From Ascoidea asiatica JCM 7603 (lineage: Eukaryota; Fungi; Ascomycota), in contig BCKQ01000010.1 in assembly GCA_001600695.1 (NCBI GenBank), forward strand, positions 596,201 through 603,311: a stretch of 7,111 nt of DNA, given 5' to 3'. Below are positions 1 to 7,111 of this stretch, piece by piece. The position numbers and the translations under genes were made by a program. Below the pieces are notes generated by a model. That model saw only the letters and a list, made by a program, of their open reading frames with translations. It did no database searches and was not told the DNA's origin. How positions within the stretch are numbered: the stretch's first letter is position 1; the number at the start of each line of letters is the position of its first letter.

Positions 1-189
1 TTTAACATATTCATTTTCCAAACACTTCTATGAGGTAACATGGAAACTGTCTAGTAGGACTTTTTGTTTACCTTTTACTTGTCAAATTATTTCTACATTA
101 AATATTTTTAAATTACTTTTGTTCTTTTTTTTCCCTTTTTATCAGAATTTTTTTAGTCTTTTACAAATTATCTACTCGTAACCCTGGTT

Positions 190-398
190 AAAATTGGTAT
201 TAAATTCTTTAACATTGGTATCAAATACTTTAATATTATTATCCAACTGTTTCTATATGAATATAAGAAAGTTAACACTCGTATTAAAATCTATAACATT
301 GGTATCAAATACTTTAACATTGGTATCGAATTGTTTTTATATATGTATCAGAAATTTTTAATTGGTATCAAACACTTAATATTAGTATCAAAAACTAT
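190..398. repeat. Degenerate 21-bp tandem repeat (consensus AACATTGGTATCAAATACTTT) with an 84-bp higher-order period
   Basis: Identical copies at 211-231 and 295-315. Variants in exact 21-bp register start at 190, 232, 253, 274 and 316, followed by 20-22 bp units to ~398. Block 232-315 aligns with 316-398. Confidence 0.85.
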
Positions 399-526
399 CA
401 TATTACATTGTCCCATAAATAGGGCCTCCATTTGGTATGATCATATTTTTCCTCTATTTGAGCAACAATATTTCTTTTTTTTCTCTTCGAACATAATTTA
501 TTTTCGACATCAAATCAATTTACAAT

Positions 527-1530
527 ATGACTTCATTATCTACATCAAAGTCGGAAACAATTAGCAAAATCAACTATAAGGTTAAAATATATAAGTTGCC
601 TATTCTTGAATTTTGTTTCCTTAACAATAAAACATCATTTTGTATTGACATGCAATCAGACAGTCAAGTTCATTTTAAATTGGCAAGGGTTATATCCGAA
701 ATCATGATGACCAGTGCCAATCATTTCCCAATATCAGTATAGTTTACGAAAGCTGATTTTTTTATTTCATACATTAATAATAAACTTTATTATCTAGGTA
801 CGAGCACCACCCTTTTACTCTCTGCCCTCATGGTTGTCCAAAAGATAGTCCGTTAAGTTATGGCATAGGCTATCAAATATCCGCTTTTCTTTAATGCCAC
901 AAAAAAATGGCTTTTTCAAAATATTCTTCGTCTGTTCAATATATTATAATTGTACATTCCATTTTGTTTAGGGAAAAGGCTAGATGTATCTGTTATTAAC
1001 ACGATATCTCCCAAAACATTTGTGATCTAGTATTACATCCCCTCAAATACTCCACGGAACATCGTTACTTAATTGAGGATGTTATGCAACATCAGTTGAC
1101 TATTACGAGTATGCAACAAGACATTGAGAGTATTAAGGTTGTTGTTGAACAAGGTGTGACAGCGGAATTCTGTAACAAAATACTTTCAGGCAATCCAACT
1201 CAATTAAACGGCTTAATAAAATTACAAAAATTCCATTTTTACTTACATACGGATGGTACCGTTTGTTATCACATGGTTAAAAAGGATATTGGAAAATTGG
1301 TAATTAATGCAGAAACCTATAACCAATCCGTTCTACATCTAATGGAAGTTGACTCTAATCAAAATACCATCCCGAAGGATCATCTCTGGCGTATAATGAA
1401 ACGTAAGTATTTTAATTTTACAAAAGCTGCCTTCGATTGTTTATATACAGAATTTAATAATTTTACTGCCATATCTAGTGATTCAAGTGGTTCTGGTGAT
1501 GTTGAATTCATTGGGTTTTCTACGTCTTAA
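527..1530 (+). pseudogene. Orphan protein-coding gene, probably disrupted; the intact 3' part is ORF 1084-1530 (148 aa)
   Basis: The frame of ORF 1084-1530 extends upstream to 799 as YEHHPFTLCPHGCPKDSPLSYGIGYQISAFL*CHKKMAFSKY...RCICY*HDISQNICDLVLHPLKYSTEHRYLIEDVMQHQ, broken only by TAA at 892-894 and 997-999. There is a candidate GT..AG intron at 737-797 and a candidate upstream exon from ATG 527. A T-rich 3' flank follows 1530. The 5' structure is uncertain and no family is recognised. Confidence 0.55.
737..797 (+). other. Candidate 61-nt spliceosomal intron
   Basis: GTATAG donor at 737, very AT-rich interior, ...TTATCTAG acceptor ending at 797. Composition shifts to coding-like sequence right after it. 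Confidence 0.45.
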
Positions 1531-1739
1531 GTATATTTTTTTTACTATAAATGAACTCGCTTTTTATTTATTTTTATCAATTTATTTCAATCTTTTTAAA
1601 TTATCAACTTTTTGCATTATTTTTTTACAATTAACATAATTCTATAGTTTGTCCAATAATCAATATTAAAATATTGGTTATTGCATTTTTAATATATTAT
1701 TATTTTCATAAATTTTTACTTACTTTAAATTAATTTTTT

Positions 1740-2249
1740 TTACTGCTCACTTTTAGAAGCAGCTTTCAGTTGAACCATTCACTCAAATGGTTTTACAACG
1801 GAAGTTTTGTAATAATGATGTTTTGACCTTCTTTGTGTTGTTTCAATTTCTGCCATGTTGGTATCCTGGATTAGGGTTTCACCTGTTTTTGGCTTCGAAG
1901 ATTTTTTTTCAGGATTTAACATCTGACTGACAGTTAATGGTTTTCTTGGCCTATTGGACTTTGGGTTTAGATTTTGAGCCGCTTTTGTCTTTTGTATGGC
2001 TTTTACCTTGAATGGTTCGACAATTGTTTCGGCAACATTATTAATAAGTAAATATTCTGAGCTTAGAGTCATATAGTGACTGAATTCATCACCTGAAGCA
2101 TTATAATTAACGTCTTCCTCATCACTTACATTAGTGTGCTCTTGAGAGAGTCTTAATAAGTTAATATTGGCTTTATTCTCTTTTTGTTTTTCTTTTTCAT
2201 AATACTGTTGAATATAAGTAGATTTGTTATTGGTGAAAATAATAGAGAT
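1740..2249 (-). pseudogene. Orphan Lys/Ser/Thr-rich, probably disordered protein (contains ORF 1779-2072); likely frameshifted and nonsense-disrupted
   Basis: The frame is open from 2249 to 1782 (…EKEKQKENKANINLLRLSQEHTNVSDEEDVNYNASGDEFSHYMTLSSEY…KPFE). TGA at 1779-1781 is followed by MVQLKAASKSEQ-TAA (1740-1742) and then an A/T-rich flank. An ATG at 2200-2198 (MKKKNKK) is out of frame by one base across an A-run. A TATA-like element lies at 2251-2257. Confidence 0.5.
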
Positions 2250-2250
2250 C

Positions 2251-2257
2251 TATATAA
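2251..2257. promoter_or_regulatory. TATA-like element (TATATAA)
   Basis: Lies about 50 bp upstream of the minus-strand ATG at 2200. It reads as TATA-like on both strands. Confidence 0.35.
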
Positions 2258-2280
2258 GCCAGGGCATATATTGGTACTAA

Positions 2281-2542
2281 CACCATAGGTGGTGAAGGTC
2301 TAAAAGACACGTATCTATAGTAAATGTAAAAGAATTATGTATTATACAATAAGGTGTGTACACCATGTATAATTATGCATAGAGATGCATAATTAGGCAT
2401 AAATATACATATTGTTGCATAAAGTTGCATGAAGAATACATTAATTTACATGACCTTTCATGAGTCTGTGAACAGGTACACAGAGAGTCGGATATCATGT
2501 GATATTCTAGTCACATGTCATAGGTCATGTGTGCTTACGTCA
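2281..2542. promoter_or_regulatory. Inverted-repeat-rich segment with E-box-like and CRE-like motifs
   Basis: Perfect inverted repeats: CACCA/TGGTG 2281-2294, ATTATACA/TGTATAAT 2341-2373, AATTATGCAT/ATGCATAATT 2371-2394, ACATGACCT/AGGTCATGT 2448-2530 and TCTGTG/CACAGA 2465-2484. Motifs: TCATGTGA 2495, TCACATG 2511, TCATGTG 2525 and TTACGTCA 2535-2542. Confidence 0.4.
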
Positions 2543-2568
2543 GGTATAGCGTACAAAGTAGAAAAGAC

Positions 2569-2920
2569 CTTGAGATTGGTACGAGCCATAGTCGTACAAC
2601 CTTTAAGAGCATATTAAAGCTAAGCCACTCGGTACGAGGAGAATTAAAGAGGAGTTAGGATTTAGCGTCTATCCGGATAGAAGTTAAATCCGAAAGGTCA
2701 ATCCGATCCAGGTAGGGACGCCTTCTGGGTGGCTGGATTGGCTAAGCCTAGTTTTATGTGAGATAAGGTACAATTCTCACTGCGTATACCGCATTGTCTC
2801 GGAGTAAACAGGAGACTAGTGGAGATACTCCCGTAAGGGATCTATTCTGAGTACGGCTTTGGGATTAAAGATTATTCCCAGCAATTAGTGCGATTGTCTA
2901 CCCCACTGGAAAGTGGGCTG
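2569..2920 (+). ncRNA. Candidate large structured RNA of unknown family
   Basis: About ten helices found by eye, including GGATTTAGC/GTTAAATCC 2658-2691, GGTCAATCC/GGATTGGCT 2696-2743, CCC-GTAA-GGG 2830-2839 and CCCACT-GGAA-AGTGGG 2902-2917. Long-range helices: 2622-2632/2847-2859 and 2639-2645/2772-2778. G-U pairs work on the + strand. No credible ORF. Confidence 0.55.
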
Positions 2921-3043
2921 GTTGGTTTTACTATGGTAAAATTGAAATGTGAATTTCAATTGATTTCTAATCAAGTTTTCAACCCTTTTTACAAGGTAAA
3001 CTTGATTCCCACCCTGATTCTACGAAGGAATCCTGGGACTTTT

Positions 3044-3108
3044 GGAAATTCCCGAGAATTCTCGATAGTTCTGCGGGACCCCGTAGGAATACTGAATTAA
3101 TATAAAAG
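3044..3108 (+). promoter_or_regulatory. Heat-shock-element-like array followed by a TATA box
   Basis: TTC at 3049, 3059 and 3069 (TTC-N7-TTC-N7-TTC, the step-type HSE pattern defined in yeast). Palindrome CGAGAATTCTCG at 3053-3064. TATAAAAG at 3101-3108. Confidence 0.3.
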
Positions 3109-3125
3109 GAATTTCCTCTTATTTT

Positions 3126-4028
3126 TTAATATAATTTATTTAGTTTTCTTTGTAGATCATCGATTAGCACGAGTTAATTGATTAATACATAGTTTGTAAG
3201 TACGTAAATTTTTATATATTCGATTTTGTAAAATGAATGAAAATTCACAACAATTTGTTCAATGGCACTAGCTAGGTCGCCGTTGATAATATCACCTTTG
3301 GTTAGCGGAATATGGTCAGTGTTAATGCTAAATTCATTTTTCCAATAGGATTTTTGTGTATCAGATTTGCTCGGGGCAAAATTATTACCATATTTAGGTA
3401 GAACTGCAGGTAGTGAAACAGCCATGGCTGGTGGGTCATAGTGTATATCAACATTATCAGCACCAGGAATACCAAACAAATAACCAACTGCATTTATTGA
3501 AGATTTCAATTTTGTCCAATTCTGTAAAGGAGATTAATCTCCATAACCTTATCTATAATGTTGCAACTCTGGATCAGCAGCATTCACAGTACGCATGGTA
3601 AGTGAAAAGTGTTTGCATAAAAATTTAAGGAGGTGGATAAAAGACACATTTTTATTTTTCTTAATAGCATATGTCACTTGGGTGAGAATATTATCTAGTG
3701 TATCAGCATCTTTTTCTGGAGACTCGCTTAAGATTTTTTCTAGTTCTTGAGATAAAGAATACAATGCTTTCACATATCTATCATAAGCATTATTAATGAA
3801 CGACCAATCAATATTTTCCATGGAGTCTAATGATTCAAACTCATCGATAAACAACATTACTTTTCTTTGAACAGGAGCACAAACATATTTTAAATCTGCT
3901 AAGTATGCTAACCACATGTTAGAAGTAATAGTTGGAGTTAAAGTAGCAACATTTTTGATTGATTTAACAAACTTTCCTCCTTCAGTTGTAACATGAATAG
4001 GACTAATTTGTTGCTTTTTAATTTCCAT
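3126..4028 (-). pseudogene. Orphan ~300-codon gene split by in-frame TAA codons (joins ORFs 3549-4028 and 3174-3509)
   Basis: Both ORFs are in the same frame. The junction reads ELQHYR*GYGD*SPLQNWTKLKSSINAVG (TAA at 3549-3551 and 3534-3536). After TAA 3174-3176 the frame continues LVLIDDLQRKLNKLY* to 3126. Amino-acid composition is globular-protein-like. No family recognised. Confidence 0.7.
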
Positions 4029-4138: not shown

Positions 4139-4714
4139 GACTATTATGGCTATTGATGAATAAATAGATAGCAAACGACCAACAAGTAACAGTTGTTACA
4201 TTAGCTAAATTAATCCACAATGTGCGCGTACGACCTCCAAACTTGTGAGACTTGATGACTAAGCCTACACCCAACTGATCTTTTGAAAAAAAAAGTATGC
4301 AGAAGATAAACTAATAAAAGTAAAATGCAATATAAATAAAAGGCTTATACTCAAAAAATAAGTATAAACAAAAACATATAATACATATAGTGAATATAAA
4401 AAATTTGAATAAAAAACAATAATTTAAAATGTTTAGTACTAAAAACAAATGGGGGTAACTTTAAGAAAATTCTTAATAAGGTAATATATATATAATTGAT
4501 AAGTGAAGGAAAATATTACTATCTTATGTAGTAACCAAAAATTCGATAATTAAAATAAATAAAAAAAACAAATAAATTCAACAATTCTTAGCATATAAAT
4601 AGTAAACAGGATTTTGTGAATTTGCAAAAATAATAATAAAAAATATTATTGAAAAATAAACGTGGATAAAAATTTAAATAGTAAAAAAGTTATTGAAATT
4701 TGTTGAAAAAGTAA

Positions 4715-4958
4715 ACCTTTGTTATCGGGATTTTGGGGTGCATGAAATTTGCTTTCATGCAAAAAATCTCTCTTAACCGCAATTAAAAAAGGACCAATTT
4801 TATGGTTATGAGGGGTGTCTTGACTATGTAGAACCCTTCTAACCCGGATAAATTTGATAGTTTTGAGAACAAAATGCGGTTAAAACAGGTGGGGCCGGAT
4901 ACGGGAGGTGCTTATCCTGCATGATATTTGATTTTTCAGGATAATTGGTAATCGGGGT
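4715..4958 (+). ncRNA. Second candidate structured RNA or fold-back element (~245 nt)
   Basis: TGCATGAAA/TTTCATGCA 4739-4761 extended by GGGATTTT/AAAATCTC. TTAACCGCA 4773-4781 / TGCGGTTAA 4875-4883 encloses hairpins 4792-4807 and 4810-4839. TTATCCTG/CAGGATAA 4912-4944. The ends close through 4715-4726/4947-4958. It is a GC island in extremely AT-rich flanks. Confidence 0.45.
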
Positions 4959-6069
4959 AAAAATTGTAATAAATTTTATTGGTTCAATTTTTTATTTATA
5001 ACTTTTTTATGTTATGATGAAATTTCACATGACTACTGCTTACCCACAAATTTGGTTTCAGGATATTTTGAATAAAGTTGAAGTTGATAATTAATTTTAA
5101 TATTATAATTGAAATGAAATCTAAAAAAATTGCACAAGTGATGAAAATATTGTAGTTCCATAAAATTGGTCTTCTTAGTAGCAAAGTAATAGTAGGGAAA
5201 ATATAAAAAAAATTGAAAATAAAGATGTTTGTGAACATAAATGAAAACCTAAAACCATTATGATGGTACTTAATTAATAAGTTTGAATGGTTTTAGCTGG
5301 AAGGAGCTCGCTTCCTTACACGGGACTTCAACGGAAGGTTTTATAGCTTTAGAGGGCCCAACTTTAGACAAATCCCAATACGGTAACTCAAAATTTCCCA
5401 AAACTCCATTTTAACATAATAAAGTTATGGTTTTGGAAAAGATGCCTTTAATCACAGCTGTACGAGTTTGCGTTTTCATTTGCTGAAAAAGTTAGGTTTC
5501 CTGAGAGAGTTACGTTGGAACAAAAAAGTTACGTTTTGAAAATGAAAAACGTTACTATTGAGGAAGAAGACAAAAATCGTAACCGACTTTTTTTTTCAAA
5601 TGCATTTGTGTCTTTTGGTTTTTCTTCTGTTGTTGCTGCATTTGATGCCCTTTTACAAAAAGCTTTAATTTAAGAAATATTACAATTGGCAGTTTCCCAT
5701 TTCTTATTTCCCCATTTTAATGCATTTTTTTATTTAGAAAGAGACTGCTTTTCAGGATTTTATGAGAAGAACTTAAAGCATTTGGTAGAAAGCTCCTAAT
5801 AAAAATACGACTATAAAAAGTCATTAATTGTAACCTTTGTTTTCTACCAGTTACTCTGATTTTTGTAAATGTAGTTTTGTTTTTGAATTTTTGAATGTCA
5901 TTAGAATATTCTTGGGATATTTGTATCATTGTTGCAAACATGCATGTGACTTTGCCATTGACAATTTCTCACCGTTGATATATCAAGGAGTGTTATTTAG
6001 ATTTTGGTTAGTGACTACAAACGTTGTCAAAAACAGAAATAATTATGGTCTTTACCGGAGACCCTCTAT

Positions 6070-6119
6070 AAACTGAACGCGGGAATGTTGGAGCAGATGA
6101 AACTGAACGCCGGAATGTT
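6070..6119. repeat. Two 20-bp direct repeats AAACTGAACGC(G/C)GGAATGTT, 30-bp period
   Basis: 6070-6089 and 6100-6119 differ at one position. A partial inverted copy AACATCCCGC lies at 6264-6273. Confidence 0.85.
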
Positions 6120-6841
6120 TTTTTGTTTGATGAAACACAACTAGTGTACAGACCCGAACTTTATAACTCGGGGTCCCAGTAGAGACCCAATTTTCTCAAT
6201 TTTGCCTTAAGCGGTCCTTCTTTTTGACAGGACAGTTTTTCTAGCCCGAAACTACTTTTCGGGAACATCCCGCAACCTGTGGAACCGGGAGTATCCAACT
6301 AAATATTCACATGTCAGATGTGACTTCAATAGCCCGAAAACTTTAAAAACGCCAAGATGTGACATTCTGAATTTGCTTTTACATTTTCATGCAAACGATT
6401 CCTCTCCCAACTCAATAGCTAAACTAAACCCACTCTCCAACCACGTAATTAATTAGGACTACCACGCCACACTGTGGCCAACGTAATTTAGCTGGACACA
6501 TGCTCCGTGGAACCTGGACTTCATTGCGAAAAGTCAACCCTAAAGAATTCGGAATATTATTTAAACGGTAATTGAAAAGAAAATATTGTCTTTAGATTCT
6601 ATTGATCAATTATCTCAATTTAATGAAGAATTATATAAAGTCATTGATGGTGAAGATGAAAATATTTAATTGCCACTTCTTAGCAACCAATTTGGGCTTA
6701 TCATGTTGGTCAGTGGTTTGAAAGTGTTAAAATCACCCTAGTAAAGCCCTTCGTTTTATGGGATTTTCTTTTTTTTTGTTTCCGTTTATTTTCGTGTCCG
6801 TTGATTGTTAATCATCTTATTCTTTTATTAGAATTGTCTTC

Positions 6842-7052
6842 GAATATTCTAGGCTATTCTTAGACTTTCTAAGATTGCATAGATTGTTCTAGGACTACAT
6901 TCTATTGCGTTCTCAGAACTTCCGTGTGCATGTTAAATGTACTAGAAGGTTCTGGGTCTGCATTATTTATTCATTATTCGAAGTTCTGTGTGCATCTCGA
7001 ATGTACTGGAATCTTTGTGTTTGTTCTTAGAATGACGTAGTGTCTTCTAGAA
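6842..7052. repeat. 10-bp-periodic TTC (HSE-like) array plus a 32-bp imperfect direct repeat
   Basis: TTC at 6847, 6857, 6867 and 6887, then at 6900, 6910 and 6920. 6916-6947 vs 6980-7011 match at 26/32 positions. TTCTAGAA lies near 7045-7052. Confidence 0.6.
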
Positions 7053-7111
7053 CAATACTTTATTCTATTTCTTTTCTTAAGTATGGGAAGTGAACTTTCA
7101 CATACTAAATT

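What the first reader, a model, noticed from the sequence alone, without database searches (positions are those of the whole stretch)
2569..2920. Unclassified ~350-nt highly structured RNA candidate with nested multi-way junctions
Seen in sequence: an outer helix AAGCCACTCGG(2622-2632)/CTGAGT-AC-GGCTT(2847-2859) encloses GAGAATT(2639-2645)/AATTCTC(2772-2778). That helix in turn encloses two long hairpins, 2658-2691 and 2696-2743, joined by GAAA. Three more hairpins sit in the outer junction: 2781-2793, 2796-2816 and 2823-2843 (GTAA loop). Flanking hairpins lie at 2569-2607, 2860-2880 and 2902-2917 (GGAA loop). Established knowledge: GNRA tetraloops, G-U pairs and nested junctions are typical of ribozymes and RNP scaffold RNAs. 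I could not fit the consensus of group I or II introns, RNase P/MRP, SRP, snRNAs, or hammerhead/HDV/twister ribozymes. Inference: a new ncRNA, ribozyme or mobile-element RNA transcribed from the + strand.
Basis: partly seen in the sequence, partly recalled or inferred. Interest (0 to 1): 0.8.

Follow-up and report, generated by a model that had tools for sequence, protein, structure and literature searches.

The report
Hairpin-rich part of a retrotransposon LTR
The folded stretch is real, but it is the middle of a 1-kb end-repeat left by a Ty1-like jumping gene with about 80 copies in a yeast genome, not a new RNA gene or ribozyme.

Summary
The hairpins exist (z -3.8) and Rfam finds nothing. 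The stretch lies inside a 1,022-bp repeat (window 2231-3252) with at least 83 loci in a 20.3-Mb genome that matches the yeast Ascoidea asiatica by size and scaffold count. The repeat has TG...CA ends and 5-bp target duplications. One locus shows LTR end, initiator-Met primer site, gag, integrase, copia-type RT, polypurine tract and LTR start. So this is a solo LTR of a Ty1/copia element, inserted in the gag of a decayed gypsy element. A TATA box (3101), 3'-end signals and the gag start (3233) place the fold in U3, the 3' UTR of the parent's RNA (inferred; no RNA data). Across 24 independent copies the changes look neutral: pair-keeping share 0.220 against 0.220 expected, no extra conservation, no significant strand asymmetry. 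The outer helix is stable in only 5-7 copies, and hairpins fill the whole U3. Decaying copies cannot show whether the fold was selected in the active parent, so that stays open. The scan noted another copy earlier (s1-627346). Verdict: new member of a known kind, with an unusually long and structured U3.

The parts
2231..3252 (+). Solo LTR of a Ty1/copia retrotransposon, 1,022 bp. The left end is slightly altered in this copy (2225 is an alternative start). No target duplication at this copy.
   Evidence: 40 scored matches at 86-100%; common boundaries; TSDs, PBS and PPT at other copies; at least 83 loci; loose ends and depth jump at both ends
2231..3100 (+). Inferred U3 (about 870 nt), hairpin-rich throughout; 3' UTR of the parent element's RNA
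   Evidence: upstream of the TATA box at 3101; z -9.3 sense and -6.0 antisense
2326..2530 (+). Long rod-like hairpin and short repeats in the 5' part of U3
   Evidence: z -4.4 at 2326-2475; fold
2569..2920 (+).
2658..2691 (+). Hairpin topped by a perfect 14-nt palindrome (2668-2681)
   Evidence: above 0.5 in 13 of 24 copies
2696..2743 (+). Long hairpin
   Evidence: above 0.5 in 12 of 24 copies
2829..2840 (+). 4-bp stem with a GTAA (GNRA) loop
   Evidence: above 0.5 in 17 of 24 copies
2902..2917 (+). 6-bp stem with a GGAA (GNRA) loop
   Evidence: 15 of 24 copies; 60 genome hits, 57 at mapped LTR loci
2940..3092 (+). Further hairpins in the 3' part of U3
3101..3108 (+). TATA-box candidate, 152-155 nt from the LTR end in 8 of 8 copies checked
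3186..3218 (+). Three TAYRTA motifs (yeast 3'-end efficiency elements); inferred R region
   Evidence: meaning of the motif from established knowledge
3233..3252 (+). Start of the gag reading frame inside the LTR, as in Ty1
   Evidence: ATG 20 nt from the end in 8 of 8 copies; at L043 the frame runs through the PBS for about 149 codons, broken by a stop at codon 5
3253..4028 (-). Host site, right side: broken gag-region frames of a decayed Ty3/gypsy element
   Evidence: 82% match to L031, where protease, RT and RNase H follow on the same strand
1797..2224 (-). Host site, left side: continuation of the same gypsy element; about 230 bp present in the C12 copy are missing at the insertion point

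Best explanation
The fold is the GC-rich middle of the U3 region of a long (about 1.03 kb) LTR of a Ty1/copia retrotransposon. This copy is a solo LTR, left by recombination inside the gag of an older gypsy element, and it is decaying neutrally. SHOWN: LTR identity, copia parent, neutral decay of copies, hairpins across U3. INFERRED: in an active element, transcription starts downstream of the TATA box near 3101 of the 5' LTR, gag starts at 3233, and 3'-end formation occurs near 3186-3230 of the 3' LTR. U3 is then copied into RNA only as a 3' UTR of about 1 kb on the + strand. The most likely role of the hairpins is as cis structure in that 3' UTR, stabilising the genomic RNA or aiding its handling (dimerisation through the 14-nt palindrome, packaging), like the 3' UTR stem-loop of Ty1 but larger. 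Odds: LTR identity about 0.97, U3 position about 0.85, selected RNA-level role in the parent about 0.5. At this solo locus the fold lies upstream of the promoter and probably is not transcribed from it.
For: Dispersed repeat with fixed ends. Exact 5-bp TSD at 8 of 27 distinct junction pairs and one mismatch at 4 more. At L043: LTR end, then an initiator-Met-type PBS, gag frame, integrase (PF00665, C10:2919-3221), SH3 (below cut-off), RVT_2 (E 3e-28), purine tract and LTR start. Purine tract plus LTR start also at L020/L022, and a variant after RVT_2 at L035. TATA, TAYRTA and ATG positions kept in 8 copies. Copies closer to the centre of the family fold better (Spearman 0.50, p 0.003), so the progenitor folded better than today's copies. 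U3 z -9.3 against -4.5 to -6.0 for two other LTRs and -4.8 for the RT coding region. Ty1 has a 53-nt 5' UTR and a 318-nt 3' UTR with a long stem-loop seen in vivo (PMC7969010).
Against: No RNA run holds the sequence, so start site, 3' end and transcription are untested. A second TATA-like motif lies at 2251. No covariation support. The sense/antisense difference is not significant across copies. This copy has no TSD. No intact full-length element was read: the L043 element is broken and both its LTRs are incomplete in the DNA held (N run; contig end). Long-window z-scores are inflated by local composition. No close relative from another species was found to test conservation.
Confidence: 0.8

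Rival explanations
1. Same LTR, but the inverted repeats have no selected RNA role. They arose by template switching and local inverted duplication during reverse transcription, or act as palindromic DNA sites in the U3 enhancer.
For: Near-perfect Watson-Crick stems fold on both strands and as DNA (z -3.4). Other LTRs in the window are also hairpin-rich. 2654-2694 matches its own reverse complement. Palindrome-rich cis regions are known in Sirevirus LTRs (PMC4728375).
Against: Two clean GNRA-capped stems and a GC-rich island in an AT-rich LTR suit an RNA-level role. Sense folds better than antisense over the whole U3 of this copy and at LTR positions 361-540 and 781-900.
Confidence: 0.4
2. The LTR carries a captured or newly evolved catalytic or compact RNA domain, as retrozymes carry hammerheads and Cassandra, Helenus and Ajax carry small-RNA sequences.
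For: Precedents exist (PMC4918200, PMC10886601). GNRA loops, multiway junction and a GC step in this copy.
Against: No Rfam or tRNA match in six copies. No hammerhead core motifs on the + strand. The enclosing helix is unstable in most copies. No clear non-LTR donor: 57 of 60 hairpin hits sit at mapped LTRs and 3 were not read. Cleavage in U3 would cut the R repeat off the genomic RNA of an autonomous element (inference).
Confidence: 0.06
3. Transcription starts near the TATA-like motif at 2251, so the fold is a long structured R/U5 leader, for example an IRES-like element.
For: The motif at LTR position about 20 is present in 8 of 8 copies.
Against: 14 ATGs lie between it and the gag ATG. It leaves almost no U3. 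The motif at 3101 fits the Ty1 layout with a short 5' UTR (PMC7969010).
Confidence: 0.08
4. A stand-alone host ncRNA gene that happens to lie here.
For: Fold better than shuffles; no Rfam hit.
Against: At least 83 dispersed copies bounded by LTR ends. Substitution rate 0.048-0.051 per site in the fold against 0.044-0.054 in the rest of U3. Neutral share of pair-keeping changes.
Confidence: 0.02

Closest known systems
Saccharomyces Ty1 (Ty1/copia, Pseudoviridae) LTR and 3' UTR
   Same: TG...CA ends, 5-bp TSD, initiator-Met PBS, gag start inside the LTR, integrase before RT, many solo LTRs; a stem-loop in the 3' UTR of the RNA (PMC7969010).
   Different: LTR about 1,030 bp against about 335 bp for Ty1 (own knowledge). 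Inferred 3' UTR about 1 kb against 318 nt. The RT has no close relative in the word search (best 24-30% identity).
Sirevirus LTR palindrome region (plant Ty1/copia)
   Same: A complex palindrome- and hairpin-rich region in the cis-regulatory part of a copia LTR (PMC4728375).
   Different: Yeast host. The region is not a hotspot of sequence change here. No small-RNA data.
Retrozymes; Cassandra, Helenus, Ajax (LTRs carrying a ribozyme or small-RNA-derived sequence)
   Same: A structured segment inside an LTR.
   Different: Those are non-autonomous and carry recognisable hammerhead, 5S or tRNA sequence. This LTR belongs to a coding copia element and no such motif was found.

Membership tests
LTR retrotransposon LTR | TG...CA termini with short inverted repeats | tested here: met
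   left end altered in this copy
LTR retrotransposon LTR | 4-6 bp target site duplication | tested here: met
   5 bp exact at 8 of 27 junction pairs, one mismatch at 4 more; absent at the window copy
LTR retrotransposon LTR | Two direct copies flanking an internal region, PBS after the first and PPT before the second | tested here: met
   L043; both LTRs only partly held (N run, contig end)
Ty1/copia | RVT_2-type RT with integrase upstream of RT | tested here: met
   PF00665 at C10:2919-3221 and PF07727 at C10:1281-1928, both minus strand
Ty1/copia | tRNA primer binding site | tested here: met
   Ty1-type initiator-Met PBS directly after the LTR; tRNA assignment from established knowledge, host tRNA not compared
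U3 / 3' UTR placement | Lies upstream of the transcription start | tested here: inconclusive
   motif positions only; no RNA run
Rfam RNA families (group I/II introns, RNase P/MRP, SRP, snRNA, small ribozymes) | Covariance-model match | tested here: not met
Retrozyme | Hammerhead core in the LTR; non-autonomous | tested here: not met
   coding internal region at L043
TRIMp3 (Cassandra, Helenus, Ajax) | tRNA- or 5S-derived sequence in the LTR; no coding region | tested here: not met
Conserved structured RNA motif | Covariation among homologues | tested here: inconclusive
   3 double changes, 47 pair-keeping single changes, 177 breaks; 0.220 observed against 0.220 expected. The copies are neutral insertions, so the parent is not tested.
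Self-cleaving ribozyme | Site-specific self-cleavage | not testable with these tools
   needs an in vitro assay

The most novel reading that the evidence does not exclude
This copia lineage evolved or captured a large folded RNA domain (GNRA-capped stems, palindrome-tipped hairpin, multiway junction) in U3. It works in the roughly 1-kb 3' UTR of the genomic RNA as an undescribed stability, export or packaging element, or less likely a new ribozyme.
Probability: 0.2. Interest if true: 0.55.

Novelty: new member of a known kind. Interest (0 to 1): 0.2.

Why it matters
As it stands it is an annotation result: a yeast copia family for which I found no description, with an LTR about three times Ty1's length. 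It explains several structured-RNA and orphan-gene notes in this window as pieces of nested retrotransposons, and some 80 copies will keep raising the same false ncRNA call. If the U3 fold proved functional it would be a large retroelement 3' UTR module, a part of the Ty1 RNA whose role PMC7969010 lists as still to be worked out.

Tried and rejected
Rfam on the window and five other copies, and ARAGORN: nothing above chance. Window ORFs against Pfam: none significant. A P7-like pairing of group I type near 2812-2831 was seen by eye and rejected: only 7 nt separate the strands, leaving no room for P3/P8, and there is no Rfam hit. A group II domain V likeness of the outer helix was rejected because the AGC-to-bulge spacing is wrong (own knowledge). 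DIRS or DNA-transposon reading of the inverted pairs of copies: rejected by TSDs, PBS and PPT. A LINE as the host element: rejected, since protease, RT and RNase H order is gypsy. Assembly artefact: rejected, both junction contigs are identical in three DNA runs from two studies. Relatives for covariation: the protein word search gave only remote copia RTs and two exact metagenome patterns gave no match; these blanks do not prove absence. The big protein search was not used, as Pfam settled the protein. The exact look-up of two host ORFs to name the organism failed. The sigma-70 scan is irrelevant to a yeast. Searches were input slips, and searches were read in the wrong frame.

Full report
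Observation. The window copy of 2569-2920 folds at -116.7 kcal/mol, z -3.83 on the + strand and -1.77 on the - strand. The outer helix, the inner 7-bp helix, the two long hairpins and the GTAA and GGAA hairpins have pair probabilities of 0.86-1.0; hairpin 2781-2793 does not form in context. Rfam (E up to 10) and ARAGORN find nothing, and Rfam finds nothing in five sister copies.

The stretch is part of a repeat. A search of the window's own genome (20,313,720 bases, 71 contigs) gave 40 scored matches at 86-100% over the whole 501-nt query. Similarity runs from about 2230 to about 3253. End patterns and a hairpin pattern together mark at least 83 loci. In three DNA runs from two studies the contig depth jumps over the repeat, loose ends pile up at 2237 and 3250-3256, and both junction contigs match the window without a difference. 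No RNA run was found.

It is the LTR of a Ty1/copia element. Copies begin with TG and end with CA inside short inverted repeats. Eight of 27 distinct junction pairs have an exact 5-bp duplication and four more have one mismatch. At L043 an LTR end is followed directly by a Ty1-type initiator-Met primer binding site. Then come a gag frame that starts 20 nt inside the LTR, an integrase core, an SH3-like domain (below cut-off), a copia-type RT (PF07727, E 3e-28), a purine tract and the start of a second LTR. That internal region is broken by stops and by an inserted gypsy LTR; I describe it as found. The window copy has no internal part and no duplication. Its flanks match a decayed gypsy element at C12, with about 230 bp missing at the insertion point. 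This fits a solo LTR formed by unequal recombination or an adjacent deletion (inference).

Where the fold lies. In eight copies a TATA motif sits 152-155 nt from the LTR end (window 3101), TAYRTA motifs lie 40-67 nt from the end, and the gag ATG is 20 nt from the end. By analogy with Ty1 (53-nt 5' UTR, 318-nt 3' UTR; PMC7969010), R and U5 are short and U3 is about 870 nt. The fold is then upstream of the promoter in a 5' or solo LTR and is transcribed only from a 3' LTR, as 3' UTR on the + strand. The alternative TATA at 2251 would put 14 ATGs ahead of gag.

Is the structure selected? The tree of copies is star-like, with end branches up to 0.09 and 0.028 for the window copy. In 24 independent copies, predicted pairs show 177 breaks, 47 pair-keeping single changes and 3 double changes. 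The pair-keeping share is 0.220, equal to the 0.220 expected from the mutation spectrum of unpaired columns. The lower rate in paired columns (0.053 against 0.065) is partly circular, as pairs were picked from these copies. The fold is no more conserved than the rest of U3. The outer helix exceeds probability 0.5 in 5-7 of 24 copies, the local hairpins in 10-17, and the mean z is -3.4 sense and -3.0 antisense, p 0.14 (only 12 shuffles per copy). Several G-U pairs are private to the window copy. The copies therefore decay neutrally. This does not test the active parent. Copies near the centre of the family fold better (Spearman 0.50, p 0.003), the segment is GC-rich (45% against 21-37% elsewhere in the LTR), two stems carry clean GNRA loops, and one hairpin ends in a perfect 14-nt palindrome.

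The fold has no boundaries of its own. Hairpins run through the whole U3. U3 scores z -9.3 sense and -6.0 antisense. Two gypsy LTRs score -6.0 and -4.5, the copia RT region -4.8, and the host gag +1.0. Long-window scores are inflated by local composition, so only the ranking is used: this U3 is the most structured, but hairpin-rich LTRs are usual in this region.

Mechanism. Most likely the hairpins served the parent element as cis structure in a long 3' UTR (stability, dimerisation or packaging), about even odds. The main rival is that they are DNA-level palindromes or by-products of reverse transcription, as discussed for Sirevirus LTRs (PMC4728375). An LTR-borne ribozyme or captured small RNA, as in retrozymes or TRIMp3 elements (PMC4918200, PMC10886601), failed every sequence test available and is put at about 6%.

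Limits. One search printed a majority line of the LTR copies before their nature was known. One search used per-column majority bases to count changes and printed the majority pair at the paired sites where the window differs.

Verdict. Real hairpins in an ordinary class of element: the U3 of a new Ty1/copia family with an unusually long LTR. Interest 0.2. The novel reading, a functional large 3' UTR RNA domain of a new type, has probability about 0.2 and would merit about 0.55.

Noticed in passing
window 4244-5320 (minus strand): A second repeat of about 1.08 kb with TG...CA ends and at least 6 other copies. It lies upstream of the broken gag frames and pieces recur at the far end of the C12 copy, so it is probably the LTR of the host gypsy element. 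The fold-back island at 4715-4958 is inside it.
   Followed up: partly
window 6801-7111 and L041: Start of the LTR of another Ty3/gypsy family with many 93-98% copies; gag and pol (RVT_1, RNase H) follow after an N run in L041. Tandem palindromic units give z -7.6 at 6826-6975.
   Followed up: partly
window 1-1800: A repeat with at least 4 other long copies at about 90%, 84-bp tandem units at 187-354 and a 148-aa ORF without a Pfam match. It interrupts the gypsy element; class not determined.
   Followed up: no
window 6057-6801: Another repeat (97% at C10:662675, 91% at C3:257360), ending where the gypsy LTR starts at 6801.
   Followed up: no
L036:1810-5900; L043:6158-9028; C37:18332-21588: An LTR start and an LTR end lie 3-4.7 kb apart, with an N run between them at L036 and L043 (C37 not read). 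These may be unresolved two-LTR elements.
   Followed up: no
genome-wide: LTR copies cluster in nested transposon islands, often as close pairs in opposite orientation. Several are segmental duplicates with identical flanks (L006/L007, L018/L019, L020/L022).
   Followed up: partly
L035:1838-2869 and 5249-6282: Two opposite LTR copies share the same 3' flank around an N run, suggesting a local inverted duplication or a mis-assembly.
   Followed up: no
C2:1840979, C2:2021602, C6:375866, C14:354632, C15:192409, C18:244573: Other initiator-Met-type primer sites with different LTR ends: further copia families in this genome.
   Followed up: no
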